NCBI RefSeq assembly: GCF_963921235.1
Contig: NC_086104.1
Coordinates: forward strand, 153,078,001 to 153,142,000
DNA: 64,000 nt
DNA from: Mobula hypostoma
Taxonomy: Eukaryota
Direction: 5' to 3'
Positions within the stretch are counted from its first letter, which is position 1, and each line of letters begins with the position of its first letter. This document shows, in pieces, positions 1-41,700 of the stretch. The notes below the pieces were generated by a model. It saw only the letters and a program-made list of their open reading frames with translations. It had not been told where the DNA came from and made no database searches. A program made the position numbers and the translations under genes.

Positions 1-43
1 AACAAGTTAAAAAGGAGTCAGCTTCAAATAGAAATTTTTTTAC

Positions 44-1287
44 CTTCTTTCATCTTTTCCTTTCAGTGTCTTGATGTTAGAGCTTTTGACATCTCGCCGC
101 TTAACTGTGCTCATTACTGTTTTTGGAGATCCACTTACATTTTGTACTGCCCCTTTACTTTTTATATTTCTTGTAGGAGACTCCAAGGTTGAATGCAACT
201 TTTGAGCAGATCTTGTAAAAGGTTTCCATATTGTCACTGGCCTACTGGCAGCAGAATTAGATCCATTCTGTATGCTTGCACTGTACAGAGATCTCTCCAC
301 TTTGACACTTGCAAACTGCTGTTCTCTCTTGTTTAATTTCCCACAGATCTTTTCCATCTTCTCTTTCGGAATTGTCACCGTACTTGTAGATTTAGCTGCT
401 GCTGAGGTTGTCTTAACCACTCTGGGGGCCACTGTTGAGGCTCCTACAGGCTTGGAGTCACCTACAGGCCTGGCTGCTCCTGGGGCGGCCCTGAGCTCAC
501 CCACGGGCCTGGCTGCTCCCGGGGCGGCCCTGGGCGCACCCACGGGCCTGGCTGCTCCCGGGGCGGCCCTGGGCGCACCCACGGGCCTGGCTGCTCCCGG
601 GGCGGCCCTGGGCGCACCCACGGGCCTGGCTGCTCCCGGGGCGGCCCTGGGCGCACCCACGGGCCTGGCTGCTCCCGGGGCGGCCCTGGGCGCACCCACG
701 GGCCTGGCTGCTCCCGGGGCGGCCCTGGGCGCACCCACGGGCCTGGCTGCTCCCGGGGCGGCCCTGGGCGCACCCACGGGCCTGGCTGCTCCCGGGGCGG
801 CCCTGGGCGCACCCACGAGCCTGGCTGCTCCCAGGGCGGCCCTGGCTATATTGTCAGTACCAATTGCCCATGATTGATTGTCTGAAGCAGTATTCTTTAA
901 TTTGCAGTCTTGAGTATTATTTGCTCGTAAAGTAAACGGCTTAATTAAAGCTCTGTTTGAAGACTGTCCCACAATTTGAGCTTTACCAACTGTGAGTTTA
1001 TTTTCCTTTTCTTGGTCGCTTGAGTTATAATGAAATTCACCACATGCTGAAGCTTCATGTTGCAAATCCCCCACACATTGTCTGGATTGGGTCACTGGAT
1101 CAGCGATAGATTCCTTTGACTCCACAGGGAGTAAAACAGTCATAACTTGTTTAGTGAGTGTGGATTTTGAATCACACTGAACTTGATTCCTAGAAATTAC
1201 TGATTCGTAATGATTCATGCATGTTGGGTTCTTCACACTGTTTAGCTTAGATGGTTTTGTGTGAGCATCATGCTTCCGATTTCCCCC
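44..1287 (-). CDS. CKAP2L: CKAP2L large coding exon 4 (GGNRK...KDERR)
   Basis: Lies within ORF 40..1314; TTTCAG acceptor ending at 1288, GTAAAA donor at 43; KEN box (QEKENK); basic, Ser/Thr-rich. Confidence 0.88.
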
Positions 1288-4200
1288 CTGAAACAGGCGA
1301 AGTTCATGCAACATCAGTCAAAGCAATGATTAAACCAAGTTTTTAAAAAATCCTTTCATTTCACAAATGTTTCTGATGATTTGGAAAATTTTAAATGCTT
1401 TATCCTCCTAACCTATTAATCTTGGAATCCCCTTATCCATTCACTATGAAAACTGTATTTGAGCATATCACTTTCTCGTTTGTCACTGACTCAACCAGGA
1501 ATTTCACAATTTCTGCATTTTTTTTTAACCTTCCAAGCCCATCTCAGAATCACTTAAATTTAAGTCATCTTCAATCTCCTACAATTTAGGTCTCCACTTC
1601 CTGGCTTTTCTAGCTCCAAACTAAACTTCTGCAAACTCACATGTACCACTGTAAACCAGCACACTAATGCTGTACTGATTAAAATACAGAGCTTTTACAA
1701 AACTATTCTATTTAATTTGCTTCATATCAAATTCTCACCCCAAAACCACCTTTGAAAGATTTAATTGCTGACTTCCATCTTCCCTCCCTCGGAAACCAAT
1801 AAATCCTGTTGTTATTCTTTATAACAAAATGTTCAATTACCAATTGCTTCCCAGCTTATTTAGTTTTTCCTCACATCTCTTTTTAAACAAAAATTAACAA
1901 CAACTTAAGGAACAGAGAAGAGATTACCAACTACTAAACCAGTGATTTGAGATATTAAATTTTGCCCCGTGGGTTTTGAACACAATTGTTCCCAATTCTC
2001 ATTCAATACAGAACTGAGAAAATGAAAAGATAATTCAAGACATATTCAATGATCCCTCCTACAAGTGCCACAAGTTAATAAGGCTCATCTACTACAATCT
2101 GGAATGGCTTAATGAAAAGAAAATACACATCAAGATACTGCTTTGACATATCAATTTGAGTGAAGCACAGACACTCTGATGAAAGATTTTAAACTCAAAA
2201 CAGTAACTACTTCCACAACAAATGATGTTAACCCAAGTATTTCTATCATTTCCCCATATGCCCTCTTCTTATTGTTACTGTTGGAAAGGAAGTACAGAAG
2301 CCTGAATGCACACACTCAGCAATTCAGGAACAGCTTCTTCCCCTCTTATTTCCATTTTTGCAATATTTTTGATTTAACTATATATATACACATATATACA
2401 TATACACACACACACTCTGCATTGTACTACTGCTGTTAAGTTAACAAATTTCATGTCATATTGTCATATCGCCATTCACTGTGATCATGTCAGCCATACT
2501 GTACTGGCTCAAAGGGCCGAATGGCCTACTCCTGCACCTATTGTCTATTGTCTATCATATGCTGGTAATATTAACCCAATTCTGATATTGTACCTAATGA
2601 TATGCAGTTGTAGAATTGGCAAGAAATTGTCATTATCAATAGGTAAACTGTTAAAACAAGCTCTGGATTAAGCCCAGTCAAGTTCATCCGAACCAGAAAC
2701 AGTGTTGTACTACAAACTTAATGCCCTTCAGTAAAAATTAGCCTCACTTTAACTAAGTAACTCTTACTCTGAAACGGATCAGTTTCTGACTTACCAAGGC
2801 AGCTTTTAATGGAGCAATTCGTTGCTGTAGCTTCTGATTAGTTTTGTCCCCCAAATAGTATCTGAAAAGAGATACTTTAATATGAGAACAATATACAACT
2901 TGAATTCTTTATTCTCCACAGACATCGTCAAAGCAGAATACTGACCCCAAAGAATCAATTGCAGAAAAAAAGTGGGGGTCAGGCGGAGAAGGGTGAAAAG
3001 TGTGGACTTAAAAAGCACATTGCAATATCTGCCAATTTAATAGCTAAGATCCTAGTTACTCATATTTTCAGCTTTTACATTTTTTCTTAAACCCTAGTTC
3101 TCCATGTGCCATGTTTGTTTCCTCCTTTACCTTCGCCTTCAAGTTTTCAGTAATTATATTGAAATTCTCCTAAATATTTGAACATAGAACATAGAATAGT
3201 ATAGTACATTACAGGCCCTTCAGCCCACAATGTTGTGCTGACCCTCAAACCCTGCCCCCCATATAACCCCCCACCTTAAATTCCTCCATATACCTGTCTA
3301 GTAGTCTCTTAAACTTCACTAGTATATCTGCCTCTACCACTGACTCAGGCAGTGTATCCCATGCACCAATCACTCTCTGAGTAAAAAACCTTCCTCTAAT
3401 ATCCCCCTTGAACTTCCCACCCCTTATCTTAAAGCCATGTCTTCTTGTATTGAGCAGTGGTGCCCTGGGGAAGAGGGAGATTTGAGTATATTAATGTCCC
3501 TATGTGTTTTGTAATTTTTGGAGGATAAAAAAAATGCACTTCCATTTATCAAACACTCAGTCTGAAGAAATTTTTAAAATGCAGTAATGAGACCTGGTTG
3601 AATAGACAATACCTAAGCAGCATGTTAGGGTAGTGGTTGTCGATGGAACAAGGCAGCACAATAGTTTGGCACATACCATATGGGCCAATGTACCTGTTTT
3701 TGTGTTGTGTTCTATGACTCTAAATCTGCTTGCTTGTTAGACCGCAGTCTAACCGGAAGACCACAGTCTGTGTGGATTGATGATAACATATCCTCCTCAC
3801 GGACGATCAACACTCGTGTACCTCTGTGGTGTGTGCTTAGCCCACTGCTCTACTCTTTGTAAACACACGTCTAGGCATAGCTCAAATACCATCTCCAAAT
3901 TTGCTGACAATACAACCATTGTTGGTAGAATCTCAGGTGGTGACGAGATGGTGTACAGGACTGAGATATGCCAACTTGTGGAATGGTGCCGCAGCAACAA
4001 CCTGGCACTCAGCGTCCATTTAGGAATCGGATGGCAGAGGGCAAGACGAAAGAGCTGATTGTGGACTTTAGGAGGGGTAAGACGAAGGAGCGCATACCAA
4101 TCCTCATAGAGGGATCAGAAGTGGTGAGAGTGAACAGCTTCAAGTTCCTCAGTGTCAACATCTCTGAGGATCTAACCTGGTCCCACCATATCGATGTAGT

Positions 4201-7200
4201 CATAAAAAAGACAAGGCAGCAGCTATATTTTATTAGGTGTTTGAAGAGATTTGACATGTCAACAAATACATTCAAAAACCTTTATATTTATACAGTGGAG
4301 AGCATTCTGACAGGCTGCATCACTGTCTGGTATGGAGAGGCTACTGCACAGGACCAAAAGAAGCTGCAGAAGGCTGTAAATCTAGTTAGCTCCATCTTGG
4401 GCTCTAGCCTACAAAATACCCAGGACATCTTCAGGAAGCGGTGTCTCAGAAAGGCAGCGTCCATTATTAAGAACCTCCAGCACCCAGGGCATTCCCTTTT
4501 CTCACTGCTACTATCAGGTAGGAGGTACAAAAGCCTGAAGGCACACACTCAGCGATTCAGGAACAGCTTCTTGCCCTCTGCCATCTGATTCCTAAATGGA
4601 CATTGAAGCTTTGGACACTACCTCACTGTCTGTGAAGTCACCTCCAGACATTGGTTAAAACTAAACAAATAGTCCATTTTTCTATTTTGTGATTGCTGTT
4701 TCAACCCTTTGACTCCTTGCAGGATAAGGAAACTAACACCAATACCCCTCGCATGCCAGCATCTCAAGCACTGAGGTCCTAATTACATTTCGTTGGTTTT
4801 GTTTGGACAAAACATATTGTTCACATGCCTGATTTCTGACCTGATAAACAGATAAAAGGTCCAAGATAGAAATATTCCAAATAAAAACAAGAAAAAAAGC
4901 ATTGAAAGGTTATTGACTTGAAATGCTGACTGATTAACCTCCCACTGATGCAACCTGACCTTGTGAGCAATTTCTGGTTTTATTTCTGAGCATCTGTAAA
5001 TTTTTCCTTTTCATTCTTTGATGCCTCAAGAGACATTCTTGATGAGACATTCCCTCACACAAATTCCTGTGGAAGCAGTGTTGTGTGATAGAATATTTAG
5101 TCAGTTGTACTGGCTCTGTCCATCAAATACTTCTCAGAAAAGCATGACTGAACCCACTGCAATTAAACAATAACTGTATCAAATGTTAATTATTCCATTG
5201 GATAATTAAACTTCTGTACTCAGTACATACTCTCTCTAAACCAGCAAATTCTCATGTAGGTTCTGAACAGCTCCAAACATGTACAGGTTACTAGGTTGAT
5301 TGGTCATAAGTGAATAATTAGACAGCAGGGTCTCGTAGGGGCACAAGGGTCTGTTACTATGCTGCATCTCTAAATAGTTTTTTAGAAACAGTGCTCTTCC
5401 ATGTCCATTTCAACTGGCTGTTTGTACTGCCTGAGGCTATACTCTCTGGAGTTCAGAAGAATGAGAGGGGATCTTATCGAAACATACAAAATTTTGAAAG
5501 GGGTAGATAAGATAGAAGTTGGAAAGTAGGAAAGTAAGTGAGGCTAGAACTAGGGGACATAGCCTCAAGATTCAGGGGAGAAAATTTAAGACAAGGATGA
5601 GGAGAAACTGTTTTTCCCAGAGAGTGGTGAATCTGTGGAATTCTCAGCCCAGGGAAGCAGTTGAGGCTTCTTCACTAAGTATATTTAAGAAACAGAGGGA
5701 TAGGTTTTTACATAGTAATGGAATTAAGGGTTATAGGGAAAAGGCAGGTAGATGGAGCTGAGTTTATGGACAGATCAGCCATGATCCTATTGAATGGCGG
5801 GGCAGGATCGATGGGCCGGATGGCCTACTCCTGCTCCTATTTCTTATGTTCTTATATGTATCAATGCTAGTTACTTCCATATCCTTCGGCTCTAAAAGAT
5901 TATACCCATAGAACTTGTGCTAACTTCAACAAGAAATAAATTCAATAGCAACTGATTTTAATCATTGTACATTATGCAAAATTAATCTCATAATAAAGTT
6001 GGTTAAAATCGGCACACCATTAAAGGAGTCTCACCAAGTGTTCATGTCAGATAACGGTGGGGATCTGGAGACAGGTTACGAGGTTGAGTGAAAACTAGAA
6101 GAGCAGGAAGACTTCGAGCTGGTTTGAAATTAGTCATTCAACCAAATTACATTAGAACAGAAATAATATAAAATTAACCTTTGAGAAAAATGATTATCAA
6201 TACTTACGCCAGAAACAGGAGTATGTAGTTTTCAAAAAGAAAAAAAAACACCACAACAATACTACAGGGGAGAAAAGGGACAAATCTATCAGATAATTGC
6301 CGCACTCATGTAATGTAACCCATACACATTTTGACTAGAATGTTTTCCGAACTAATGTGGACAAACCTGTCATTAGGACCCGGAATCTTCAGTTTCCCCT
6401 TTCTCTGGAGATAGGCTTCAAGTTGTTGCCTTCGGCATTCTGTTTCAGAGGGGGAAAGAATTGTTATGGGTTAAACTTGTAATCATCATTTAATTAAATC
6501 TAAAAATGCACTGAAATCACAAAACTTTCACAGGATAAAGTGGTGATTGCATTTGCTTGAAAATACAACTGCTGAAATCACAAACTACGCAATGCGTAAC
6601 CAGTAAAAATCTGTTGCAAGTTGCTCATAATCAAGCAACCACAATATACTTCTCATAAATTCTTGGCAACTCAGCTCAAAGCTTTTCAAGCTGGTTTGTT
6701 ATACAGCTTTTGTTATAGATTCCAACATTTTTTCTACCATCTGCATTAGATGAATAGGTTGATAATTCCCCACTTTATTCTTCCCTTCTTTCTTTAATAT
6801 AGTTCACATTTGTAATGCTTCCACAGAAATTATTCCAAAAAGTATGGAATCCCAGAAAGTGACAACCAAAGCATCAACTGTTGTTAAAATCCTGTCCAAA
6901 GCTCTGGGATGTAGTTCATCAGGTCCTTGGTATATATCAGTTTTCAGACTCACCAACTTTTCTAATACTCTGTTTGGTCAACAGATAAATCCTGCAGTTC
7001 CTCATACTACATCCTTGGTTCTCTAATATTGCTTGTCTTCCATAATTGTTTAATTTCACTGCTATTTTCCATTATAATTTCCAATGTCTGTGCCCTTGCT
7101 AGTAGTACATGAAAATGCCCTTCAAGGCAAACACCATCCTACTTAGCAACATACACAAAACAGTGGAGGAACTCAGCAGGTTAGGCAGCATCTATAGAAA

Positions 7201-10200
7201 AGAATAAACAGTCGACAGGTGGAGGGAGGGGAAAGAGACTAGCTGGAATCTGGTAGGTGAAGCCAGCTTCGTGGGAAAGGTCAAGGGCCGGAGACAAAAG
7301 AATTTAATAGGCGAGGAGAATGGACCATGGGACAAAGGGAAGGAGAAGGAGACCCAGCAGGGGTAAGTAATAGGCAGGTGAGAAGTACAAGGTCTGAGTG
7401 CGGAATTTGTTGACCAGAAGCAGAAATCTATATTCATGCCATCAGGATGGAGAGTAACCAGATGGAATATAAAGTGTTGGTCCTCCACTGGAGGGTGGCC
7501 TCCTCTTGACTCAAGAGGAAGCCATGGATTGTCATGTCGGAACGGGAGTGGGAATCAGAATTAAAATGTTTGGTCACAGGAAAGTCCCGCTTGTGGCGGA
7601 TGGTGTGAAGGTGCACTGCCTCAACGACTACCGTCCCGTCACACTCACGTCCATCGTCATGAAGTGTTTCGAGAGGCTCGTCATGAGGCACATCAAGACC
7701 CTGCTGCCCTCCTCACTGGACCCCCTGCAGTTCGCATACTGTCCCAGCCGTTCAACAGACAACGCCATTGCCATCACTCTCCACCTGGCCAAAAAAGACA
7801 CGTACATTCGAATGCTGTTCATAGACTTCAGTTCAGCATTTAACACAATCATTCCTCAGAAACTGATTGGAAAGCTGAGCCTACTGGGCCTGAACACCTC
7901 CCTCTGCAACTGGATCCTAGACTTCCTAACTGGGAGACCTCAGTCAGTCCGGATTGGAAGCAGCATCTCCAACACCATCACACTGAGCACGGGGGCCCCC
8001 CAGGGTTGTGTGCTCAGTCCACTGCTGTTCACTCTGCTGCAACACACAGCTCGAACCACATCATCAAGTTCGCCGATGACACGACCGTGGTGGGTCTCAT
8101 CAGCAAGAACGATGAGTCAGCACAGAGAGGAGGTGCAGCAGCTAATGGACTGGTGCAGAGCCAACAACCTGTCTCTGAATGTGAACAAAACAAAAGAGAT
8201 GGTTGTTAACTTCAGGAGGACATGGAGCGACCACTGTCCGCTGAACATCGACGACTCCTCCATAGAGATCATTAAGAGCACCAAATTTCTTGGTGTTCAC
8301 CTGGCAGAGAATCTCACCTGGCTCCTCAGTACCAGCTCCATAGCAAAGAAAGCCCAGCAGCATCTCTACTTTCTGCGAAGGCTGAAAAAAGTCCATCTCC
8401 CACCCCCGATCCTCACCACATTCTACAGAGGTTGTATTGAGAGCATCCTGAGCAGCTGCATCACTGCCTGGTTCGGAAATTGCACCATCTTGGATCGCAA
8501 GACCCTGCAGCTGATAGTGAGGTCAGCTGAGAAGATCATCGGGGTCTCTCTTCCCACCATTAGAGACATTTACACCACACGCTGCATCCACAAAGCAAAC
8601 AGCATTATGAAGGACTCCATGCACCCCCCATACGAACTCTTCCCCCTCCTGCCATCTGGCAAAAGGCACCGAAGCATTTGGGCTCTCACTACCAGACTAT
8701 GTAACAGTTTCTTCCCCCAAGTCATCAGACCCCTCAATACCCAGAGCCTGGACCGACATCAACCTACTGCCCTCTACTGTGCCTATTGTCTTGTTTATTA
8801 TTTATTGTAATGCCTGCACTGTTTTGTGCACTTTATGCAGTCCTGGGTAGGTCTGTAGTCTAGTGAAGTTTTGTGTTTTTTTTTTTACGTAGTTCAGTGT
8901 AGTTTTTGAATTGTTCATGTAGTACCATGGTCCTGAAAAACGCTGTCTCGTTTTTACTGTGTACTGTACCAGTAGTTATGGTCGAAATGACAATAAAAAA
9001 TGATTCGAATTGACTTGAAATGATGGGTCGAATTACTGGGACTCCATACCTTTTAAAAATAAATTGGTAAATTGGTTTATTAATGTCACATGTAATGAGA
9101 TTTTGCATCCATCCATACTGATCATTACAACAGTACATTGAGGTGATACAAGGGAAAACAATAACAGAATGCACCGAAAGTGCAGTGTTAGCCGATCATA
9201 AGGTGCTAGTCCATAACGAGGTAGTTTGTGAGGTCAAAAGTCCATTTTATCATACTATGGATTATTCAATAGTTAGTGGTGCAGAAGCTGTTCTCAAGCC
9301 TGCTGACAGGTGCTTTCAGGCTTTTAATTTCTACCTGGTGGTAGAGGTGAAGATGACAGAATGTCCATGTTGTCTTACCAAGGCAGCAAGAAATGATGAG
9401 TCTACGGAGAAAAATCAGCTATCTATTAATTTCCATAGATGTGGCCTGACCTGCTGGGTTCCTCCAGCATTTTGTGTGCCCACGGAGGGCCTCTTGAAAA
9501 GCACCCTCTAATGGACATTCTGATGCAAAAGCACTATATCAGGTTTTGAAAGATTAGCAGGCTCACATTACAGCAATATCAATCACAGCAAAACCACTGG
9601 AGGAACTTAGTGGGTCAAGCAGCATTTATGGAGGTAAAAGGACGGCCGGCAATTTAGATCGACGGCGTACATTGAGAATCAACATGGCAGCAGACCTCTG
9701 CCAGCTCTTTCTATAGAAGACACGAAAGGTGCACATGCCACTTGCCTGGTAGAGCAAAAACTATCGTGTTTTATTGTAGGTTTTGATATAGTCCACTCTG
9801 GATGCTGACAGAGCCCAGTATCTTATTCTGACCTTTAAATTCTTCATCTCCCATCATCCAGCAAACCAAACTGCCCTGGAAGAAACCAGTTCATGGTTCA
9901 TGCTCTAACTTGGAGAGGCCAAACTCAGATTGTATGATGACTTGCAAAACACTACGATAAGGTCAGTAAGGTCGACTCTGAGCTTCCAGTTGCCTCTCAC
10001 TTTAATTCTCCATCACATTCATCCTTCAATGTTTCTCCTATAGCATCAGGTACAAGAGGTTGTATCTCATGTTCAAGCTTTTTGTCATGCATACATATCT
10101 AGTGTATACATGACATGAAAATTAGTTTTTGCAGCAGCAGTAATACCACAGTGCATTAGAAAGATGATAAATCTTTTACACAAAACTTACATGACACAAT

Positions 10201-10863
10201 AACCAAAACAAAACCACAACATTTAAGCAATTTGACAGAAGTATCTACTTGCATGTTATAAACCTCGGAACTTAATATTGTGTTTAACAATTTCAAAGTC
10301 AAAGTCGAATTTATTGTTATTTACACAAGTACAAGTATGCACAGGTGCAAAGAACAGCTTACTTGCATCAGCATCACAGGCTACACCCCTCATGCAATCT
10401 GCTCAACCTGTCGGTTCGTAGAAGCTATTTCTACCTTGACAACTTCGTTCTGCACTTAGAGACATTCATTGCTCTCTCTATTCCCTCCACCAAAAGCACT
10501 TCTTGTTTGCTTACTATTCAAGTACTGATTGAGATGTCAAGGGCTGTTTCTTTCCCCAAAGATGCACTTTGACCTTCTGGGGCACTTCCAATATTCTTGG
10601 TTTTTTTTTGGTCATAATTTCAGTAACTCTATCTAAAATTAAAGACCCAAGGCAGATCAGACCTTAAAGCATGGATGTCAGCACTAAACAGATGTCCACT
10701 CCCCACCCATATTGACCACGGGCACCCGCGGTCCCCAGCTGGACAACTATTCATGCACGAAAAGGTGGGCAAACCCCTTATTGAGACGCTGTCAGATCCC
10801 CCTCACCCCACCTTTACCTGATTCGGCGATCCGAGCGCTGTCACACCGCCTTCTCGTCTCCAT
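44..10863 (-). CDS. CKAP2L: Cytoskeleton-associated protein 2-like, 5' part. Coding exons 10818-10863, 6367-6439, 2795-2861, 44-1287; gene continues beyond the left edge.
   Basis: Four exons with GT/AG ends and matching phases (1,2,0,2) splice to [50 protein letters not shown]...-large low-complexity exon with a KEN box ending KDERR. This matches the CKAP2L N-terminal ERxRKLxEYLxxKGKLK motif and the DRR-ending large exon. It sits next to IL1B, as in other vertebrates. Confidence 0.88.
461..845. repeat. 39-bp GC-rich coding minisatellite, about 10 units (8 identical, 500-811), encoding [13 protein letters not shown]
   Basis: Unit cccacgggcctggctgctcccggggcggccctgggcgca repeats in tandem, with variant terminal units. 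Confidence 0.97.
2795..2861 (-). CDS. CKAP2L: CKAP2L coding exon 3 ([23 protein letters not shown])
   Basis: TCTTTTCAG acceptor, GTAAGT donor; 67 nt joining phase 2 to phase 0. Confidence 0.8.
3181..3475 (-). mobile_element. CR1 LINE 3' fragment
   Basis: Short-repeat tail (aacatag) and the CR1 3' end shared with other copies in the window. Confidence 0.75.
3735..4627 (+). mobile_element. Rex1/Babar-like (L2/CR1-group) LINE, RT C-terminal fragment
   Basis: [40 protein letters not shown]. Confidence 0.8.
5161..5427 (-). pseudogene. IL-1beta 3' remnant (end of last coding exon plus 3'UTR) inside CKAP2L intron 2
   Basis: About 5391-5427 translates on minus as [12 protein letters not shown], against DKQPVEMDEKKH / NRQPVEMDVKEH in the intact copies. 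5161-5270 aligns with the IL1B 3'UTRs at about 19130-19230 and 38440-38541. A SINE fragment (about 5271-5375) interrupts it. Confidence 0.7.
5428..5835 (+). mobile_element. CR1 LINE 3' fragment
   Basis: RTRGHSLKI...[11 protein letters not shown]; ttcttatg-type tail. Confidence 0.85.
6367..6439 (-). CDS. CKAP2L: CKAP2L coding exon 2 ([24 protein letters not shown])
   Basis: Polypyrimidine tract plus AG acceptor, GT donor; conserved LxxYLxxKGKLK motif. Confidence 0.88.
7148..7612 (-). mobile_element. Penelope-like element 3' fragment
   Basis: GIY-YIG C-terminal remnants ([26 protein letters not shown]) and the PLE terminal sequence. Confidence 0.75.
7616..9018 (+). mobile_element. Rex1/Babar-like LINE, 5'-truncated, frameshifted RT
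   Basis: [48 protein letters not shown]; 3'UTR with AATAAA. Confidence 0.88.
10818..10863 (-). CDS. CKAP2L: CKAP2L coding exon 1 ([15 protein letters not shown]+G)
   Basis: ATG in a CpG island; donor CAG|GTAAAG; 46 nt, phase 1, fits exon 2. Confidence 0.8.
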
Positions 10864-11050
10864 GTCGCCACTCGCCGCACCACAACCGCCGTTGCGTTCA
10901 AACCAGCCGCCACCGTTCGCGCCGCTCCCTGACGGGAGGCGCCGCCATCGACGTATTTCAAATTCGGCCAATCGCAGCCCCGATGCCCTCGGTCGCGCCC
11001 TCTGACGCGGTTGGCGGGCTCGGGAGGCTGGCCGGCAGAGGGGCGGCCTC
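10864..11050 (-). promoter_or_regulatory. CKAP2L CpG-island promoter with CDE/CHR (10897-10911), second CHR (10957-10962), CCAAT (10968-10972), MYB-like CAACGG (10889-10894) and E2F-like TTGGCGGG (11011-11018)
   Basis: Minus strand reads GGCGG-CTGG-TTTGAA, i.e. CDE + 4 nt + CHR. The region is CpG-rich and directly upstream of the ATG. Confidence 0.7.
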
Positions 11051-11094
11051 CATCCTAGCAAGCCGTTTCTCCTCCGTTCAGAGCCCCAAACCGT

Positions 11095-11715
11095 GCTTCC
11101 AGGTGAGGTAACGCAAAAGATTCACCTGCGAATCTGCCGGGGTCCGATACGGCCTCCTCTACATTGGTGAGACCCGTGGTAAATTGGGAGACCGCTTCGT
11201 CGACCGCTCTGTACCATCCGCCACAGGCGGGACTTCACGATAGCCAATTATTTACATTCCGATTTCCATTCCCGTTTCGACGTGTTGGCCCATGCCTCCT
11301 CTTGTGCCAAGTTGTGTCCACCCTCAGGGTGGAGGAGCAACCCCTTATATTACGTCTAGGTAGCCTCCAACCTGATGGCATAAATATCAATTTCTCCTGG
11401 CGGTGAATAAATTCCCCACTCTGCCCTTTCACTTCTTCTCACCTGCCTGTTACTTGCCCCTGGGTCCACTGTTCCCTTTTTCCCGCGGTCCACTCTCTGC
11501 TATTAGATTCTTTTTTTTCTCCAGCCCTTTACCTTTCCTACCCACTTCTCTTCACCTATCACCCTCCAGCTCTCCTCGTTTCTCCTCCCTCCACCCTTTT
11601 ATTCTCACGTATTTCCTCTTCCTTCTCAGTCCTGAAGAAGGGTCTCGGCCCAAAACGCCGACTGTCTATTAGATGTTGCCTGACTTGCTGAGTTCATCCA
11701 GTATTTTGTGTCTGT
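11095..11715 (+). mobile_element. Penelope-like element 3' fragment
   Basis: YIGET-like ctctacattggtgagacc, EEQPLILRLGSLQPDGININFS, and a terminal degenerate hammerhead motif. Confidence 0.78.
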
Positions 11716-11877
11716 TCTATTGTTAGCTAGTGTAGGAAGGATGTTGATGAAAGACAGAGCTTATGATGTAAGCTGTCATAAGTTCTGGCATCTGCCTGAG
11801 GAAGCCCTGGAGAAGTTGCTTGAGTTTTATAATGAGGTCTGGAAGCACTGAATTCCTCCAGGACACTGGAAAAGAAT

Positions 11878-12660
11878 CTGAATCAGATTTATTATCACCT
11901 GCATGTGACGTGAAATTTTGAACTTAGCAGCGGCAGCAGTTCAATGCAGTACATAATCTAGCAGAGAGAGAGAAAAAAACAATAAAATAAAACATAATAA
12001 ACAAGTAAATCAAAATAGATTATTAAAAATGTGAAAAAACAGAAATACTATATATTAAAAATAAAGTGAGGTAATATCCAAAGCTTCAAAGTCCATTTAG
12101 GAATCAGATGGCAGAGGGGAAGAAGCTGATCCTGAATCGCTGAGTGTGTGCCTTCAGGCTTCTGTATCTCCTACCTGACGGTAACAGTGAGAAAAGGGCA
12201 TGCCCTGGGTGCTGGAGGTCTTTAATAATGGACGCTGCCTTTCTGAGACACCGCTTCTTAAAGATGTCCTGGGTACTTTGTAGGCTAGTACCCAAGATGG
12301 AGCTGATTAACAACCTTCTGCAGCTTCTTTTGGTCCTGTGCAGTAGCCCCTCCATACCAGACAGTGATGCAGCTTGTCAGAATGCTGTCCACGGTGTAAT
12401 TATAGAAGTTTTTGAGTGTATTTGTGGACATGCCAAATTGCTTCAAACTCCTAATAAAGTATAGGCACTGTCTTGCCTTCTTTATGACTACATCAGTGTG
12501 CTGGGACCAGGTTAGGTCCTCAGAGATCTTGACACCCAGGAACTTGAAGCTGCTCATTCTCTCTACTAATGATCCCTCTATGAGGATTGGTATGTGTTCC
12601 TTCATTTTACCCTTCCAGAAGTCCACAATCAGCTCTTTTGTCTTACTGACATTGAGTGCC
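11878..12660 (-). mobile_element. Rex1/Babar-like LINE 3' fragment (same family as 3735-4627)
   Basis: [35 protein letters not shown]; atctga-type tail. Confidence 0.82.
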
Positions 12661-12689
12661 ACAGGCCTCTTGCTCTCGCTTCACTATGC

Positions 12690-13760: not shown

Positions 13761-13779
13761 AGGGAATCTAACTGAGCAA

Positions 13780-14061
13780 GACATCAGCAGTATACCGGAC
13801 ACTCAAGGGTAGCAGGGAAGAGAAGTGTGCGCAGTCACAATTACGACAGAGAAAGTACTCAGGAAGCTGAATAGTCTAAAGGTAGATAAATCTCCCGGAC
13901 TAGATGGAATGCACCCTCGTGTTCTGAAGGATCTGTGGAGATTGCGGAGGCATTAGCGATGATCTTTCAAAAGTCGATAGATTCTGGCATGGTTCCGGAG
14001 GACAGGAAGATTGCAAATGTCACTCCGCTATTTAAGAAGGGGGCAAGGAAGCAAAAAGGAA
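13780..14061 (+). mobile_element. CR1 ORF2 internal fragment
   Basis: DKSPGLDGMHPRVLK, VPEDRKIANVTPLFKKG. Confidence 0.8.
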
Positions 14062-15620: not shown

Positions 15621-15974
15621 GGTGGTTTTGTGTGATGGAAGGACAGATGGATGTTACAGCAAATCAGGCACTTACTAAGACTTTCAATCCTGGAATCATT
15701 TTCGTGAAGCTCCTTTGAACCCTCTCCAGTTTCAGCATGGGGGCCCAAAACTGCTGACAATACTCCCAAGTGAGGCCTCACCAGTGTTCTATAAAGCATC
15801 AATATTACATCCTTGCTTTTATAGTCTGCGCCTCTGAAAATAAATCTTATCATCGCATTTGCCTTCCTCACCACCAACACAACCTGCAAATTAAGCTTTA
15901 AGGAATCCTGCATGAGAACTCCCAAGTCCCATCACACCTCAGAGTTTTGAATTTTCTCTCTGTTTATGAAACAC

Positions 15975-18795: not shown

Positions 18796-19253
18796 GTTTT
18801 TATTTCATTGTATGTTTCAATGTACAATGTCCAGATAAATAATTCTGAATCTGAGAGCTTATAGATGTCAGAAACTTTATGTACTTTACCTTTTCACAGA
18901 ATATTCAAGGAAATTTGAAATGAAGAGGGGACTTGTGATTTGAAAATAACATATTTAATCAACCAATAAGAAAGTTTCTCCACCTGTACAGTAATAATTC
19001 AAATAATAACAATAATTATTGAATTATTATATTTTTGTATTTGAAAACTCAACACATTATTCTCACGATTAAATAGCTCTAAATGATAAAACGTAAACGT
19101 GAGCAAATATTGCTGCCTGTATATCTCAGTAATTAGAAGATAATTCTATCTACTGTTAATCAAATAAGAGATATTCTGTACTTTGTACATACATACTCTC
19201 TAAACCAACAATTTCTGATTTGTTTTCTAAATAACACAGAGAATTAAAATGCC

Positions 19254-19466
19254 TCATTTAGCTGTGAAGATCGTGATTCTGTTATGGTGTTTCTTCTCAT
19301 CCATTTCAACTGGCTGCTTGTCCCTGTGGGATGTGCTGATGTACCACCCATGATGTAGAGCCGACTCAAACTCAAAGTAATGGCCTGCACCTGAAACCTT
19401 CTTGAAGAAAATGAAGCGAAGCAGGTCAGTGGCACTACTGATATTTTGCAAATTCTGATCCCATTT
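19254..19466 (-). CDS. IL1B: IL1B copy A exon 6 (terminal)
   Basis: KWDQNLQ...LLRFIFFKK...FESALHHGWYIST...TIFTAK*; putative ATTAAA polyA signal at 18954-18959. Confidence 0.94.
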   Translation of the reverse strand, partial: KWDQNLQNISSATDLLRFIFFKKVSGAGHYFEFESALHHGWYISTSHRDKQPVEMDEKKHHNRITIFTAK

Positions 19467-22400
19467 CTGTGAAAATAAATGTCAGAAACGAAGTTAAGTA
19501 CAGTTACATTTCAAATGAGAAAGCTATAAATAGTATTACTCAGGACAGGCTGCCTCCACAGCAGGTGCTGAGCATGTGTTGCTGGGATGAGATTTGTGCC
19601 AGCTGCATGTTTGTAAAGATAGCCCTAACCTTGCCAACCCTTTCAGTATTTAAAGTGTTCAGGCTGGAGAGAATTGGGATCCTCTGCTCTGTTTAAACTT
19701 CTCATTACTTAATTACCTATCAGTTAAAAGTCGCTAACAATTCAGTTTTGAAACTGTTCTGAGTTGGCTGACCTGAATTGGGGAAGGGACATAGTTCTCA
19801 ACATTCCAGGATTGGGGACAAAAGTACAGAGTACTGACCACTGACCTCACAGATTAGGATATTAAGTAAGGATTTAGTTGTGATATCACTCTCCAGTCAA
19901 GAGCGTTCAGTTTCAATGATCAGCTCTGTAGAAATGTATTTTTTTCATCTTATGAGTGAGTGTGTGTGTGTGAGAGAGAGAGAAAGCATTAAACCTATCT
20001 TCTCAATGCTAACTTCTGATTGTGCCGTTTTACTCCTTTTTCCAATAATTTATTCTTTGTTCTCTTCCTTGCCATCAATTCACTTTGATTTTCATGCTAA
20101 CTAGCAAAACCTTGGGTAACATGCAGGGGACAATTAACCCGCAGGTCTTTAGGATACGGACAAAAGTGGAGCACCTGGAGCAAGCACACCTCCAGAATGG
20201 AGAATGGTCAGTACCTGGAATGGAAATTCTTCCGGAGGAAATCAGATATGGTGAAAGGTGTTGGAAGGTTCTCAATGATGTTATGGAACCTGAATATATG
20301 CTGGATATAGGCTAACAAAGCCAGTGTAAGGGAGATGTTTTGAAAAGTGGATAAAATTCTCTGTCACATGTGATTTGCAGAAGGCCCAAGGAAAAGGTGG
20401 AAGCAGAGGCAGATTCTCCAGACAACAATACATGGGACTGTGTACCAGTCAGTTAACCACATGCATACATGATTTCTTACCTCCACTCGCATCCTGGGAT
20501 TGTCCGGTGGCCCTGAGCACGAGAGGAACGTATTCTGATTGTTTATTCCCAGAACAACCGGCAAATAATTTACTTCACCGGAAGTTGCCTTGTAGTACCT
20601 CACATTAAGTGTTACTGTCAACCAAAGGAGGGATATTTTAGCACAGTCATCAAAATACATATATACTCATATCAATAAAAGTGCTGCAATGTGGTAGCTA
20701 CTTTATTTGGAGTTATAACCAAGCTATTCATTGCATCTAAGTAATCTAAGGCCATGAATGGAGCATGACACATTGGGCGGGGCAACTATTCAGACTCCCA
20801 TTCTTACCCATGATTCATTCATAACTTTGTTTAGCTCTATATTCCTATTTCAGCTGGAGAAGCATGCTGATGACAGGGTTAAATAAAATGTCGCAGGCTG
20901 AAGGCAGCGCATTTTTAGAGAGTTAAAGGTATGAGAGGGACATGTGAAAAGCAATTGAAGACATTTCCTATTTTGTGCAATGTTCTTTCCCATTCGTCGT
21001 AACACCTTGAAGAGTTAGATACTTCTGCCAATCTTTCCATATTTTAAGTACAACAAAAAAGTGAGAGCATAAAGTTTACCCACCTTCGTCTGATGGCTGC
21101 TGCAAGAACATGGCCAGGAGCTGGAAGTTCTCTGATAACTTCAGGCATTTGTCTTGTTCATCCCTCACTTGCTGACACTCAGTCTTCATGAACCTGTAGG
21201 AGCTGGGCACCACTTCAGCACCTTCATAGTTGGTGTAAGTGATGGCTTCTGTTGGCACAAATAAGATTAAGTTATTGATCATGGTATATTAACAGAGATT
21301 AAACATAAATGAAATCCCGGACCCAACTATTTCTTTACTATTCCTGGGCATTGTCAGTGTTGGCAAATCTGAGTGTATTGATTTGTAGTATTGGCAGTTC
21401 TGAGTGTATTGATTTGTCGTGGTTATTCTGTTGAACATAGAACATTACAGCACCATATAGGCCTTTCAGCCTATGAAATTGTGATGTCCTTTTAATCTGC
21501 TCTGAGATCAATCTAACCCTTCTGCATAACTCTCCAATTTTTTATATATCATCATCAATGCCTATCTTAGATATTCTTAAACGGTCCTAGTGTATCTGCC
21601 TCTGCCACCACACTTAGCAGTGCATTCCACACATCCACCACTCTTTTATAAAGACCTTACCTCTGACGTTCCTCCTGTACTATCCTCTGATCACCTTAAA
21701 ATTATGCTACCTTGTATGAGCCTTCTCTGCCCTGGGAAATGTTTCTGGCGATCCACTGTCTATTTTATCATCTTGTACATCTCTGTCAGGTCACCTCTCA
21801 TCCTTCTTTGCTTCAAGGAGAAAAGCCTTAGCTTGCTCAACCTTTCTTCATAAGACATGCTTTCCAGTCCAGTCAGTATGCTGTCTCTTTTGGGTTTTTT
21901 TTTTGATAACCCTTCTTCTCAAATCTTTGTGGGAAAGGCACAGTCCTGCATTTTGTAGGAAATCTCATGACAGTGATGAGCATCAGTGAAGGCTCAGTGT
22001 TAACAGAACCACTGGGATCAAGAGCAGATTGCAGGCCTTCACATTGGAACCAGTGCTTCCAATTGTAACTAATCACGACAGACAGAGTAACAATACTGAA
22101 AGGAAAGATCAGCTCACCTTCTACAAGTGCATTGAAGTTTCCAAGCAAATCAGTGTCTCCAAAGCAAGTACTTTCACAGTCCCAGCTGTTTGTGCATGGC
22201 TGCTGCAACTTCCTCTTGAATTTTTCAACTGCAAGAGCCAACATGATGGCTTTCTCCAGTGTCAGCTTTGCAGAACCAGCCGTGCTAATAGATAAGAACT
22301 TTCCCGTGATCTTCAATTGGTAACTGTCTGAATGGTGACGTGCAGTGCTCAGCTCCATCAGACTTGGTGATGTTTTTTGAAATGGGCTCTGCATAATGAG

Positions 22401-36840: not shown

Positions 36841-38110
36841 ATGAAAATCTGTTAACTCTGCTTCTCGTCCCATAGATGCTGCCTGACCCTGTGATCCTCT
36901 CCAGCATTTTCTATTTATGTTTCTAAGAATCTAAAGATATTTGCTTTTCTCTCTTTGATGCAAAAAAAGACGTTGTACTTCGCTTCAAACCTATTTTCCA
37001 CACAATGTGCTTTCAATGCTGGAGCTGTGTGCACTAACTTCTAACGAGTTGTTCTGGAATCCGCTCATTCATCCGATTAAACTGCATCAGCAGGTTCAAG
37101 TGTTCACTTTAAATGGCAATATGTCCACCTGTATCATTGGCCTATCTAAGTCTTCAAAGTTCACTACACACTCAAGTTTGTGTTCTTGTACATTTTGAAA
37201 TTGTTCCCTTTATTTAAGAAACCTTACTCTTTCAAGGTTTGACATTGTAAGTAACTATGAGGGAGAATATTTGCTTGGCTTGACGTGCAAAGATGTACCT
37301 CGGATGGACAACCAAAATGTTGTATTTATGATGGTTGGCTATATTTAACTAACATCACTGCAAGGTATGTTAGCTATTCACTTATTGTTCTCTAGTTATA
37401 AATTGTCTTGCCCTTTCCTTCATTACTCTAGTGATTAACTTTAACCATGCTTCCTTTATGCTCTGTAAAATGAGCTGGGCCACCCAAGGCCAAAAGCTCA
37501 AGGCAATGATAAGAAACGTAGCCAGCAGCTAATTAAAGGGGGCAAAAATAAACAAGTGGCTGTGGAAATACTGAAGCATCATTTGCCAATGAGAGATGGG
37601 GCTTCTGTACTTGCAAACCCTCCCCCCCACCAGATCAGAGGTCCATGTGGGCAGGAGGTTTGAAGGTCGGTGATCTTTGAGATATGAGAGTCAGCAAGGC
37701 CAGAGTTAAAGTCCTGAAGTCTACAGTCCCAACATCTGTGAGGCAGGTGCTTGAGGCCTGAATTCGGGGTCCTGTCATCAGCATCCAGAGTACAAAGCTT
37801 TTGTTTGAGGTACCATCATTGACAAATCATGGGATTGATACTGATGATCAAAGCCTGAAAGTCTGGAGGACTGTGTGCGAGTGTGTGCAAGGGAGGGAAG
37901 GAAGTGGCTTGTGGGCATGTTATGTTTGTGCTGGAATGTATGGCGACACCTGGGGGCTGCCCAGCTTGTCATTAAGTGTGATTTGGTGTGTTGGCGCTTA
38001 ATGGATACCACGTATTTTAATTTACATACAATAAATCAGTCTGAATCTGAGAATATTAAGGTAATATGAAAAGTGAAGAGGAGAACTTGTTATTTGAAAA
38101 TAATATATTT

Positions 38111-38417
38111 AATCAATCAATGAGAAGGTTTCTCCTCCAGTACAACAATAATTTAAATAATAACAATAAATATAGAAATATCATAATTCTGAATTCCAAA
38201 ACTCAGCACACTTTTTTCACCAATAAATAACTCCAAATGATAAAACTTAAATGCAAGCAAATATATAATCAACAAACAAGGTTTCTCCTCCAGTACAGCA
38301 ATAATTTAAATAATAACAATAAATATAGAAATATCATAATTCTGAGTTCCAAAACTCAGCATACCTTTTTCACCAATAAATAACTCCAAATGATAAAACA
38401 TAAGAGCAAGCAAATAT
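38111..38417 (-). repeat. About 153-bp tandem duplication in the IL1B copy B 3'UTR, carrying AU-rich elements
   Basis: gtttctcctccag begins at 38128 and again at 38281. Each unit has TTATTTATT and TTATTTAAA on the mRNA strand. Confidence 0.9.
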
Positions 38418-38560
38418 TGCTGCCTATACATATCAATAATTAGAAGACAGTTCTATCAACTATTAATCATATAAGAGATTCCCTGTACTTAGTACATACA
38501 TACGCACTAAACCAACAATTTCTGATTTGAGTTCTGAACAGTACAGAGACTTAAAATGCC

Positions 38561-38773
38561 TCATTTAGCTGTGAAGATAGTGATTCTCTTGTGGTGTTCC
38601 TTCACGTCCATTTCAACCGGCTGCCTGTTCCTGTGGGATGTGCTGATGTACCACCCACGGTACAGAGCCGATTCAAACTCAAAGTAATGGCCTGCACCTA
38701 AAACCTTCTTGAAGAACACGAAGCGAAGCAGGTCAGTGGCACTACTGATACTTTGCAAATTCTGATCCCATTT
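38561..38773 (-). CDS. IL1B: IL1B copy B exon 6 (terminal)
   Basis: LLRFVFFKK...FESALYRGWYIST...TIFTAK*; putative ATTAAA at 38108-38113. Confidence 0.94.
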   Translation of the reverse strand, partial: KWDQNLQSISSATDLLRFVFFKKVLGAGHYFEFESALYRGWYISTSHRNRQPVEMDVKEHHKRITIFTAK

Positions 38774-41700
38774 CTGAGCAAAGAAATGACAGAAACAAAG
38801 TTAAGTACAGTTACATTTTAAATGACAAAACTGTAAATGATATTACTCAGGACAGGTTGGCTTCCACATAGCAGATGTCTGAGCATGTGTTGCTGGGATG
38901 GGATTTGTGCCAGCTGCATGTTTGTAAAGACAGTCCTAACCTTGCCAACCCTTTCAGCAGTCAAAGTGTTCGTGAGGAGTTCCAGTCTGGAGAGCAATGG
39001 TATGCTTTGCTCTGTTTGAACTTCTCATGGCTTAATTATCTATAATCCATAAATTGCTAACAATTCAGTTTTGAAACTGTTCTGAGTTGGCTGACCTGAA
39101 TTGGGGAGGGACGTAGATCTCAATATTCCAGGACTGGGGACAAAAGTACAGAGTACTGACCACTGACCTCACAGATTAGGATATTAAGTGAGGATTTAGT
39201 TGTGAAATCACTCTTCAGTCAAGAACTTTCAGTTTCAATGATCAGATCTGTAGAAAATGTATTTTTTTCCATTTAGAGAGAGAGAGCTTTCAGTCTTTCT
39301 CAATGCTAGCTTTTGATTGTGCCATTTTACCCATTTTTCCAAAAATTTATTCTTTGTTCTGTTCCTTGCCATCAATTCACTTTGATTTTCCTGCTATCCA
39401 GTAACACCCTGGGTAACATGCAGAGGACAATTAATCTGCACATCTTTGGGATATGGAGGAAATTGGAGCACCTGGAGCAAGCACACATCCAAACTGGAGA
39501 ATGGCCAGTACCCTGGAAAGGAAATTCTTCAGGAAGAATTTGGATATGGTGAAAGGTGTTGGAAGGTTTCTCCCTGCGGTTATGGAACCTTAAAAAATGC
39601 TGGATATAGGCTAACCAAGCTATTGTAAGGGACACATTTCGAAAAGTGGATCAAATTCTGTCACATGCGATTTGCAGAAAGCTCAAGGAAAAGGTGGAAG
39701 CAGAGGCAGCTTCTCCAGACAACAACATGGGACTGTGTACCAGTCAGTTAACCACGTGCATACATGATTTCTTACCTCCACCTGCATCCTGGGATTGTCC
39801 GGTGGCCCTGAGCACGAGAGGAACATATTCTGATTGTTTATTCCCAGAACAACTGGCAAGTAATTTACTTCACCAGCAGTTGCCTTGTAGTACCTCACAT
39901 TCAGCATTACTGTCAACCAAAGGAGGGATATTTTAGCACAGTCATCAAAACACATATATGCTCATATCAATAAAAGTGCTGCAATTTGATAGCTACTTTA
40001 TCTGGAGTTATAACCAAGCCATTCATTGGATCTAAGTTAACCGTGGAAACAACTGGAGCATGACACATTGGTGCAAGACAGAACTATTCGGACTCCCATT
40101 CCTACCCATAATTGATTCATAGCTTTGCTTAGCCCTATATTCCTATTTCAGCTGGAGAAGCATGCTGATAACAAGGTTAAATAAAATGTCACAGCCTGAA
40201 GGCAGCACATGTTTAGGGAGTTAAAGGTATGAAAGGGACATGTGAAAAGCAATTGAAGCCATTTCCTCTTCTGTGCGATGTTCTATCCCATTCGTCATAA
40301 CACCTTGAAGATTTAGATACTTCTGCCAATCTTTCCATATTTTAAGTACAACAGAAAAGTGGGAGCATAAAGTTTACCCACCTTCGTCTGATGGCTGCTG
40401 CAAGAACATGGCCAGGAGCTGGAGATTCTCTGATAACTTCAGGCATTTGTCTTGTTCATCCCTCACTTGCTGACACTCAGTCTTCATGAACCTGTAGGAG
40501 CTGGGCACCACTTCAGCATCTTCATAGTTGGTGTAAGTGATGGCTTCTGTTGGCACAAATAAGATTAAGTTATTGATCATGGTATATTAACAGAGATTAA
40601 ACATAAATGAAATCCCTGACCCAACTATTTCTTTACTATTCCTGGGCATTGTCAGTGTTGGCAAATCTGAGTGTATTGATTTGTAGTATTGGCAACTCTG
40701 AGTGTATTGATTTGTTGTGGTTATTCTGTTAAATGTAGAACATTACAGCACCATATAGGCCCTTCAGCCCATGAAATTGTGATGTCCTTTTAACCTATTC
40801 TAAGATCAATCCAACCTTTCTCTCCTGCAAAACTCTGCATTTTTTAATATATCATTCATGCCTATCTTAGATGTTCTTAAATGGTCCTAGTGTATCTGCC
40901 TCTGCCACACACTTGGCAGTGTGTTCCACGTACCCACCACTCTTTTATAAAGACCTTACCTCTGACATTCCTCCAGTACTTTTCTCTGATCACCTTAAGA
41001 TTATGCTACCTTGTATTAGCCTTTTCTGCCCTGGGAAAAGTTTCTAGCCACCCACTGTCTATCGTATCATCTTATGCACCTCTATCAGGTCATCTCGCAT
41101 TCTTTGTCTCATGACAGTGAATGAGCAAAAGTGAAGGCTCAGTGTCAACAGAACCACTGGGATCAGGAGCAGATTGCAGGCCTTCACATTGGAGCCACTG
41201 CTTCCAATTGTAACTAATCACGACAGACAGAGTAACAATACTGAAAGGAAAGATTAGCTCACCTTCTACAAGTGCATTGAAATTTCCAAGCAAGTCAACA
41301 TCTTCAAAGCAAGTACTTTCACAGCCCCAGCTGTCTGTGCATGGCTGCTGCAACTTCTCCTTGAATCTTTCAACAGCAAGGGCCAACATGATGGCTTTCT
41401 CCAGTGTCAGCTTTGCAGAGCCAGTCGTGCTAATGGACGAGGACCTCCCTGTGATCTTCAAGTGGTAACTGTCTGAATGGCGACGTGCAGTGCTCAGCCC
41501 CATTGGTGATGTTTTTTGAAGTGGACTCTGCATAATGAGAAACCACCAATAAATCCCCCAATTCAGCTATCACAATAATTTTAGAGCGCCTGATAGCTAG
41601 GGTACGGAACAATTGATAAGCAGGGAGAAGTCTATCCTAGGATTCGTGGGATAAACATCAGACAGTGTGTAAGACTTGAAACCTCACAAATAAAAATTAA

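What the first reader, a model, noticed from the sequence alone, without database searches (positions are those of the whole stretch)
5161..5427. Hidden fourth IL-1beta fragment inside a CKAP2L intron
Seen: no ORF call flags it, but the minus strand encodes [12 protein letters not shown], matching the IL-1beta C-terminus. 5213-5270 (ctgtactcagtacatac...ctaaaccagcaaattctc...gttctgaacag) matches the IL1B 3'UTR in the correct order and orientation, split by a SINE and cut by a CR1. Weaker similarity may continue at about 5836-5990 (tentative). Inference: either a 5'-truncated retrocopy that landed about 14 kb from its parent, or a relic of an older duplication or rearrangement interleaving IL1B with CKAP2L.
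Basis: partly seen in the sequence, partly recalled or inferred. Interest (0 to 1): 0.7.

Follow-up and report, generated by a model that had tools for sequence, protein, structure and literature searches.

The report
Decayed IL-1beta scrap in CKAP2L intron
A roughly 270-base, long-dead scrap of the tail end of an interleukin-1 beta gene really does sit inside an intron of the neighbouring CKAP2L gene of a devil ray, but it looks like an ordinary, non-functional leftover of old local gene copying.

Summary
On the minus strand, 5426-5382 reads [14 protein letters not shown]. Two collinear pieces, 5429-5370 and 5270-5161, match the end of the coding sequence and the proximal 3'UTR of the two intact IL1B-like genes (A, last exon at 19.3 kb; B, at 38.6 kb). 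Their scores were reached by 0 of 500 shuffles (z 7.5-15).

A repeat piece (5271-5369) splits the match. A 5'-truncated LINE 3' end (5430-5859, + strand) abuts it. The site is CKAP2L intron 2, between exon 2 (6449-6363) and exon 3 (2863-2795), in the same orientation and 13.9 kb from copy A.

The tentative continuation at 5836-5990 is not supported. No IL1B homology exists beyond either edge.

The scrap is equidistant from A and B (70% identity to each; A-B 85%). It therefore predates the A/B duplication and is about as old as pseudogene C. It lacks the distal 3'UTR, the poly(A) signal, a poly(A) tail and a significant target-site duplication.

It is single-copy and shared by four coded organisms. 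It is no better conserved than its flanks, and no RNA contigs hold it.

It is most likely a neutral relic of local DNA-level copying, not a canonical retrocopy. Interest is low.

The parts
5370..5429 (-). IL1B-derived piece 1, the end of the last coding exon. It corresponds to A about 19327-19262 and B about 38634-38569. It contains the residual frame [14 protein letters not shown] at 5426-5382, with a stop 8-9 codons earlier than in the parents.
   Evidence: z 7.5-8.4 against shuffles. The matching residues lie inside the PF00340 match of the parental exon.
5271..5369 (.). About 100 nt of a moderately repeated SINE-like element. It replaces about 26 nt of parental sequence around the stop codon and the start of the 3'UTR.
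   Evidence: Contig depth is 690-1271 against about 14 for unique flanks, in several organisms. It has weak copies at 60367-60400 and 6071-6090. The SINE class itself was not verified.
5161..5270 (-). IL1B-derived piece 2, the proximal 3'UTR. It corresponds to A about 19232-19140 and B about 38541-38438. Weak similarity may run on to about 5122.
   Evidence: (z 12-15). Depth is single-copy at 80% likeness or more over 5048-5239.
5430..5859 (+). It lies in opposite orientation, and its 5' junction coincides with the 5' edge of the IL1B homology.
   Evidence: Copies at 79-89% identity at 31620-32042, 55110-55473 and 57520-57932, among others. Boundary comparison. Depth is 1e5-1e6. The 80-aa ORF tail at 5519-5761 (+) is.
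4900..5040 (.). Old interspersed repeat downstream of the scrap. It bounds the region in which homology could have continued.
   Evidence: 4940-5037 matches 36868-36974 at 69% (E 2e-7). There is a depth bump in bin 4920-4983.
6363..6449 (-). CKAP2L exon 2 (residues 13-41). It is the upstream boundary of the host intron.
   Evidence: tblastn of P0001, P0003 and P0004, 83-90% identity, E about 1e-11.
2795..2863 (-). CKAP2L exon 3 (residues 40-62). It is the downstream boundary of the host intron.
   Evidence: tblastn of P0001, 100% identity.
18940..19472 (-). Parent-type sequence in copy A: the last exon (stop at 19259-19257) plus a 3'UTR of about 300 nt ending after ATTAAA at 18959.
   Evidence: PF00340 E 8e-9..
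38090..38780 (-). Parent-type sequence in copy B: the last exon plus a 3'UTR carrying a 157-nt internal tandem duplication, with ATTAAA at 38113.
   Evidence: PF00340 E 1e-8..

Best explanation
This is a genuine, non-functional relic of the 3' end of an IL1B last exon. About 170-190 nt of parental sequence survive: the last 65 nt or so of the coding sequence and the first 95-135 nt of the 3'UTR. It lies in the sense orientation in intron 2 of CKAP2L, 13.9 kb downstream of IL1B copy A. It split from the IL1B lineage before the tandem duplication that produced copies A and B, in roughly the same era as the decayed third copy C. Most likely it arose by DNA-level local copying within the IL1B-CKAP2L neighbourhood. 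That could have been a partial segmental duplication of which only this junction piece survives, or a short templated patch laid in during break repair or replication template switching. Afterwards it decayed neutrally, a SINE-like piece replaced its stop-codon region, and a 5'-truncated LINE landed at its 5' edge, possibly deleting the upstream part. Shown: its identity, extent, host intron, relative age, single-copy state, sharing between species and lack of extra conservation. Inferred: the DNA-level, local mechanism.
For: Both pieces are independently significant and collinear with the parents. Within the 64 kb window the parental exon 6 plus UTR matches only A, B and this site, apart from one weak AT-rich 39-nt hit at 61301-61336 (E 0.003). 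Site patterns are frag=A but not B, 11; frag=B but not A, 11; A=B but not frag, 34. Identity is 70% to each of A and B, against 85% for A-B. K2P is 0.39, against 0.34-0.37 for C versus A and B over 690 nt. The host position in CKAP2L intron 2 comes from tblastn of Mobula, Hypanus and Pristis CKAP2L. No poly(A) tail is present, and neither the distal UTR nor the poly(A) signal region is detectable: the parental ATTAAA lies about 300 nt after the stop, whereas the scrap's homology ends about 95-135 nt after it. The flanking direct repeat is within chance (P about 0.10). Close proximity and shared orientation with the source are expected for local DNA copying and very unlikely for random retroposition (inference). 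The scrap, the SINE piece and the LINE edges occur in contigs of four coded organisms. Divergence there equals that of the flanks: 2.0% against 1.5% in organism B, and 5.6% against 5.2% in organism D. Depth over the UTR piece is single-copy. No RNA run holds its words.
Against: No intron-5 or downstream intergenic homology survives on either side, so a DNA-level origin is not positively shown. The whole scrap lies within one exon, so the intron test cannot be applied. The 5' edge coincides with a LINE junction and the 3' edge fades into old repeats, so the original extent is unknown. A marginal T-rich hit of 4899-4860 to the distal UTR (local P 0.014-0.026) would, if real, mean that nearly the whole 3'UTR was once present, as in a retrocopy. 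The semi-global test does not support that hit (P 0.26-0.35).
Confidence: 0.6

Rival explanations
1. It is a 5'-truncated processed retrocopy of an ancestral IL1B mRNA that happened to insert 14 kb from its parent. Its distal UTR and poly(A) tail were later lost to deletion and repeat insertions.
For: The scrap is the 3' end of the last exon, as in 5'-truncated retrocopies. There is a marginal collinear hit of 4899-4860 to the distal UTR (P 0.014-0.026). A 10/11 direct repeat lies at the two edges (5105-5115 and 5422-5432).
Against: There is no A-run of 7 or more anywhere in 5385-4700. No significant homology to the distal UTR or poly(A) signal region is found. The direct repeat is within chance (P about 0.10). 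Landing within about 14 kb of the parent, in the same orientation, by random insertion into a Gb-scale genome has odds of the order of 1e-5 (inference). The LINEs abundant here are not known to me as efficient makers of processed pseudogenes (background knowledge, not tested).
Confidence: 0.12
2. It is the detached tail of pseudogene C. Copy C lacks its last exon, and a rearrangement moved that tail into CKAP2L intron 2.
For: C's homology to A and B stops at 30317 (equivalent to A 19562), about 90 nt before exon 6, at a repeat insertion, and no exon 6 follows. C and the scrap are similarly diverged from A and B. A member of the repeat family found at C's break also lies at 4043-4627.
Against: About 240 nt of parental sequence between C's end and the scrap's start are found nowhere. 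Copy A and CKAP2L exons 1-2 lie between the two sites, so a complex rearrangement would be needed. No flanking sequence is shared between the two sites except repeats.
Confidence: 0.08
3. It is a chance similarity or a member of a dispersed repeat family shared with the IL1B 3'UTR.
For: The pieces are short (35-60 nt cores) and lie among repeats.
Against: 0 of 500 shuffles reach either score, and the genomic null never reaches the combined score. The two pieces keep parental order, orientation and approximate spacing. One piece is coding sequence inside the PF00340 domain. Depth is single-copy at 80% likeness or more over 5048-5239 in four organisms, while the true repeats alongside pile up 50 to 100,000 times.
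Confidence: 0.03
4. It is an exapted functional element. Examples would be a retained IL1B 3'UTR regulatory hairpin, or an alternative terminal or poison exon acting on CKAP2L transcripts, which run in the same sense.
For: It has the same orientation as CKAP2L. A small TGTAC-NNN-GTACA stem is kept in A, B and the scrap. It has been retained in four organisms.
Against: Between-species divergence equals that of the flanking intron. No RNA contigs hold it. There is no poly(A) signal within about 400 nt. The coding frame is 14 codons followed by a stop.
Confidence: 0.03

Closest known systems
Unprocessed (duplicated) pseudogene fragments in tandem cytokine gene clusters
   Same: It lies next to its source in the same orientation, is of the same age class as another decayed copy (C), has no reading frame, decays neutrally and is riddled with repeat insertions.
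   Different: Only one sub-exonic piece survives. No intron or flank homology is left to prove the DNA-level origin. It lies inside an intron of the neighbouring gene rather than between genes.
Templated sequence insertions at break-repair sites (class 2 TSIPs of Onozawa and Aplan, PMC5110952), and template-switch insertions at rearrangement junctions
   Same: It is a short patch copied from elsewhere, with both ends internal to the source exon, no poly(A) tail and no significant target-site duplication.
   Different: TSIPs are described as templated from distant regions, often through RNA. Here the source is 14 kb away in cis. The junctions are obscured by later repeats, so microhomology or filler cannot be read.
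5'-truncated LINE-mediated processed pseudogenes (class 1 TSIP-like)
   Same: It represents the 3' part of a last exon.
   Different: It lacks the distal 3'UTR, the poly(A) signal, a poly(A) tail and a significant target-site duplication. It lies beside its parent.
Conserved CKAP2L-IL1B synteny of vertebrates (PMC7144542, Synteny section)
   Same: CKAP2L lies directly next to IL1B here too, and all genes are on one strand.
   Different: The new point is only that a scrap of IL1B lies within CKAP2L itself.

Membership tests
Processed pseudogene / retrocopy | Exon-exon junction, with no introns | tested here: inconclusive
   The whole scrap maps inside the last exon. Nothing upstream of the LINE matches exon 5 or intron 5.
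Processed pseudogene / retrocopy | Homology runs to the parental poly(A) site and is followed by a poly(A) tail | tested here: not met
   The parental ATTAAA is at A 18959 and B 38113, whereas the scrap's homology ends at about A 19140-19102. There is no A-run of 7 or more in 5385-4700. The distal-UTR test gives P 0.26-0.35.
Processed pseudogene / retrocopy | Target-site duplications at both ends | tested here: inconclusive
   The 10/11 repeat at 5105-5115 and 5422-5432 is matched or beaten in about 10% of random window pairs. The 5' junction is overlaid by a LINE.
Processed pseudogene / retrocopy | Insertion site unrelated to the parental locus | tested here: not met
   It lies 13.9 kb from copy A on the same strand.
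Unprocessed segmental or tandem duplicate pseudogene | Homology extends into introns or intergenic flanks | tested here: not met
   5860-6362 and 5160-5041 show none. The flanks share only repeat families with the regions downstream of A, B and C. Erosion and a LINE-associated deletion could explain the absence.
Unprocessed segmental or tandem duplicate pseudogene | Close to the source and in the same orientation as the other copies of the array | tested here: met
   A, B, C, the scrap and CKAP2L are all on the minus strand within 44 kb.
Templated patch insertion (break repair or template switch) | Short insert with both ends internal to the source, without a poly(A) tail or target-site duplication | tested here: met
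   The ends fall at about A 19327 (mid-exon) and about A 19140-19102 (mid-UTR). There is no poly(A) tail and no significant target-site duplication. The original ends may have been trimmed later.
Templated patch insertion (break repair or template switch) | Microhomology or filler at junctions, seen against an empty site | not testable with these tools
   All four organisms reached carry the filled site.
Functional IL-1 family gene (PF00340) | Open frame encoding the beta-trefoil domain | tested here: not met
   Only 14 codons followed by a stop. No other IL1B-like peptide occurs in 1-17500.

The most novel reading that the evidence does not exclude
The scrap is a fixed, multi-million-year-old templated patch. 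On this reading a break or stalled fork in CKAP2L intron 2 was repaired by copying about 200-330 nt from the neighbouring IL1B last exon, or from its nascent transcript. That would make it a cis, short-range counterpart of class 2 templated sequence insertions, in a cartilaginous fish.
Probability: 0.25. Interest if true: 0.3.

Novelty: new member of a known kind. Interest (0 to 1): 0.15.

Why it matters
The scrap adds a fourth, oldest-class trace to the history of IL1B copying next to CKAP2L in devil rays. It shows that copying in this locus once reached into the neighbouring gene. It is useful for annotation: it should be masked as a pseudogene fragment and not read as an exon. It can also serve as a shared-derived marker for the species that carry it. 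There is no sign of function, so it has little bearing on IL-1 biology.

Tried and rejected
1. The continuation at 5836-5990 or 5860-6362 was aligned to all of A, B and C. The result did not differ from shuffles, and there were no peptide hits.
2. Downstream continuation was tested in two stretches. 5160-5041 gave nothing. 4899-4860 gave a T-rich local hit to the distal UTR (P 0.014-0.026), but a semi-global test that allows for choice of position gave P 0.26-0.35. It was not accepted.
3. The target-site duplication candidate (10/11 at 5105-5115 and 5422-5432) had an empirical P of about 0.10. It was not accepted.
4. LINE template switching onto IL1B mRNA was rejected. It predicts that both parts share one orientation and that the 3' end of the mRNA piece abuts the LINE 5' end. 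Here the orientations are opposite and the 5' edge of the IL1B piece abuts the LINE (inference).
5. Collinear single-copy homology was sought between the intron flanks and the regions downstream of A, B and C. Only repeat families were found.
6. Further IL1-like exons were sought in 25-29 kb, 31.6-37.4 kb and 44.6-64 kb. None were found.
7. The orthologous introns of Mobula birostris, Hypanus sabinus and Pristis pectinata could not be obtained. The gene was located in two assemblies but no DNA was served, and the Pristis protein is not on record.
8. Rfam over 4600-6500 gave nothing meaningful, only one E 0.5 hit inside the LINE.
9. Earlier scan notes searched by words returned nothing further.
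10. My first alignment scoring was too permissive, with a shuffle mean of 152 against 277 observed. It was replaced by stricter scoring.

Full report
**What is there**

Read on the minus strand, 5426-5382 translates to [14 protein letters not shown] followed by a stop. A self-comparison of 4900-6100 against the window gives two same-strand, collinear matches to each of two loci:
- 5404-5425 with 19300-19321 (95%).
- 5391-5420 with 38594-38623 (83%).
- 5212-5255 with 19174-19219 (83%).
- 5214-5270 with 38483-38541 (80% over 59 nt, E 7e-8).

Those loci are the last exons of two IL-1 family genes. Their translations hit Pfam PF00340 at E about 1e-8, and the residues matched by the scrap lie inside that domain match. 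At the peptide level this is the only IL1B-like hit in window 1-17500.

**Is it more than chance?**

I used scoring that keeps shuffles in the low-score regime.
- The coding piece 5429-5370 scores 35-39 against a shuffle mean of 18 (z 7.5-8.4).
- The UTR piece 5270-5100 scores 49-55 against a shuffle mean of 20 (z 12-15).
- 0 of 500 dinucleotide shuffles reach either score.
- The two pieces keep parental order and orientation.
- With looser scoring, none of 588 other 337-nt window-strand comparisons (337-nt windows at 150-nt steps, each scored on both strands) reaches the combined score.
- In the reverse direction, the parental last exon plus UTR matches only A, B and this site, apart from one weak AT-rich 39-nt hit at 61301-61336 (E 0.003).

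**Anatomy**

Going 5' to 3' on the minus strand:
- A 5'-truncated LINE 3' end lies at 5859-5430. It is on the + strand, has at least 8 copies in the window, and has contig depth 1e5-1e6.
- IL1B coding-end homology starts at about 5429, at the LINE's 5' junction, and runs to about 5370.
- A repeat piece of about 100 nt (5369-5271, depth 50-90 times unique) replaces about 26 nt around the parental stop codon.
- 3'UTR homology runs from 5270 to 5161, fading by about 5122.
- In parental coordinates this spans about A 19327 to 19140-19102. That is the last 65 nt or so of coding sequence plus the first 95-135 nt of a 3'UTR of about 300 nt.

**Host gene**

The 424-aa ORF at 40-1314 (minus strand) is 99% identical to CKAP2L of Mobula hypostoma. 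tblastn places the exons as follows:
- Exon 1 at 10863-10819.
- Exon 2 at 6449-6363.
- Exon 3 at 2863-2795.
- Exon 4 at 1302-43.

The scrap therefore lies in intron 2, in the sense orientation, 13.9 kb from copy A. CKAP2L-IL1B synteny is known from teleosts to human (PMC7144542).

**Edges**

- Upstream of the LINE, 5860-6362 has no similarity to any part of copies A, B or C (z -0.6 to 1.8) and gives no peptide hits.
- Downstream, 5160-5041 shows nothing.
- After an old repeat (4900-5040), a T-rich stretch of 26-40 nt at 4899-4860 hits the distal UTR with local P 0.014-0.026. A semi-global test gives P 0.26-0.35, so I do not accept this hit.
- The flanks share only repeat families with the regions downstream of A, B and C.

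**Age**

Over 160 aligned columns the scrap is 70% identical to A, 70% identical to B, and A-B identity is 85%. Site patterns are 11 (scrap = A only), 11 (scrap = B only) and 34 (A = B only). The scrap is therefore an outgroup to A and B. Its K2P distance of 0.39 is of the same order as that of the decayed third copy C against A and B (0.34-0.37 over 690 nt). Copy C itself ends at 30317, about 90 nt before where exon 6 should start.

**Retrocopy tests**

- The parents share an ATTAAA about 300 nt after the stop in A (18959), with its homologue at B 38113. The scrap's homology ends well before it.
- No A-run of 7 or more exists in 5385-4700.
- The only flanking direct repeat (10/11 nt) is matched or beaten in about 10% of random window pairs.
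- Random retroposition would almost never land 14 kb from its source (inference).
- LINE template switching does not fit the orientations.
- The intron test cannot be applied, because everything lies within one exon.

**Population and species evidence**

Contigs of four coded organisms carry the scrap.
- Organism A is identical.
- Organism B has one contig over 4600-5464 with 17 differences.
- Organism C holds it in pieces.
- Organism D has one contig over 4992-5436 with 25 differences.

In organisms B and D the contigs also carry edges of the LINE. Divergence equals that of the flanking intron: 2.0% against 1.5% in organism B, and 5.6% against 5.2% in organism D. There is thus no sign of constraint. 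Depth over 5048-5239 is that of unique sequence even at 80% likeness, which argues against a repeat family. No RNA run holds its words.

**Conclusion**

This is a real, old, neutral IL1B-derived relic. Its mechanism is inferred, not shown.
- Local DNA-level copying fits best (about 0.6). This means either a partial segmental duplication of which only the junction piece remains, or a short templated patch (compare class 2 TSIPs, PMC5110952).
- A canonical retrocopy is unlikely (about 0.12).
- A detached tail of copy C is possible but unparsimonious (about 0.08).
- Chance or a repeat family (about 0.03) and an exapted function (about 0.03) are each very unlikely.

It is a new member of a known kind and of low interest. 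The decisive step is an empty or fuller orthologous site in outgroup batoids.

Noticed in passing
window 459-845 (minus-strand CKAP2L exon 4): There is a 78-nt tandem repeat, about 5 copies at 95-98% identity, encoding 26-aa Ala/Pro/Gly/Arg-rich units. The Mobula birostris protein is 52 aa (two units) shorter than the M. hypostoma one (690 against 742 aa), which suggests copy-number change between close species.
   Followed up: no
window 29100-31600, breakpoint at 30317: IL1B pseudogene C is about 72% identical to A and B over its longest block (77-81% in a shorter one), and only about 1.3 kb of it is recognisable. It ends about 90 nt before where its last exon should begin, at a repeat insertion (30052-30307), and no exon 6 follows.
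   Followed up: partly
window 19562-19650, 38872-38961, 30317-30408: A 90-nt stretch of IL1B intron 5 just upstream of the last exon is 80-88% identical in pseudogene C, against about 72% for the rest of C. It could be a conserved non-coding element, a gene-conversion patch or an embedded repeat.
   Followed up: no
window 38105-38417: Copy B's 3'UTR carries a 157-nt tandem duplication (92.5% identity), which doubles its ATTTA count relative to copy A (8 against 4).
   Followed up: partly
window 29132-29711 versus 44056-44624: There is 85% identity between sequence far upstream of copy A and sequence directly upstream of copy B. The A/B duplication unit therefore reached further upstream, and about 4 kb (25.0-29.1 kb) has since been inserted on the A side.
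   Followed up: no
window 7506-8810 (+), 14207-15617 (-), 3968-4588 (+), 12104-12662 (-): LINE reverse-transcriptase ORF remnants fill CKAP2L introns 1-2 and the IL1B-CKAP2L spacer. Pfam RVT_1 and ALKBH8_N-like tail hits were obtained for the two scanned (7506-8810 and 14207-14785). The 434-aa ORF at 7506-8810 is the longest.
   Followed up: no
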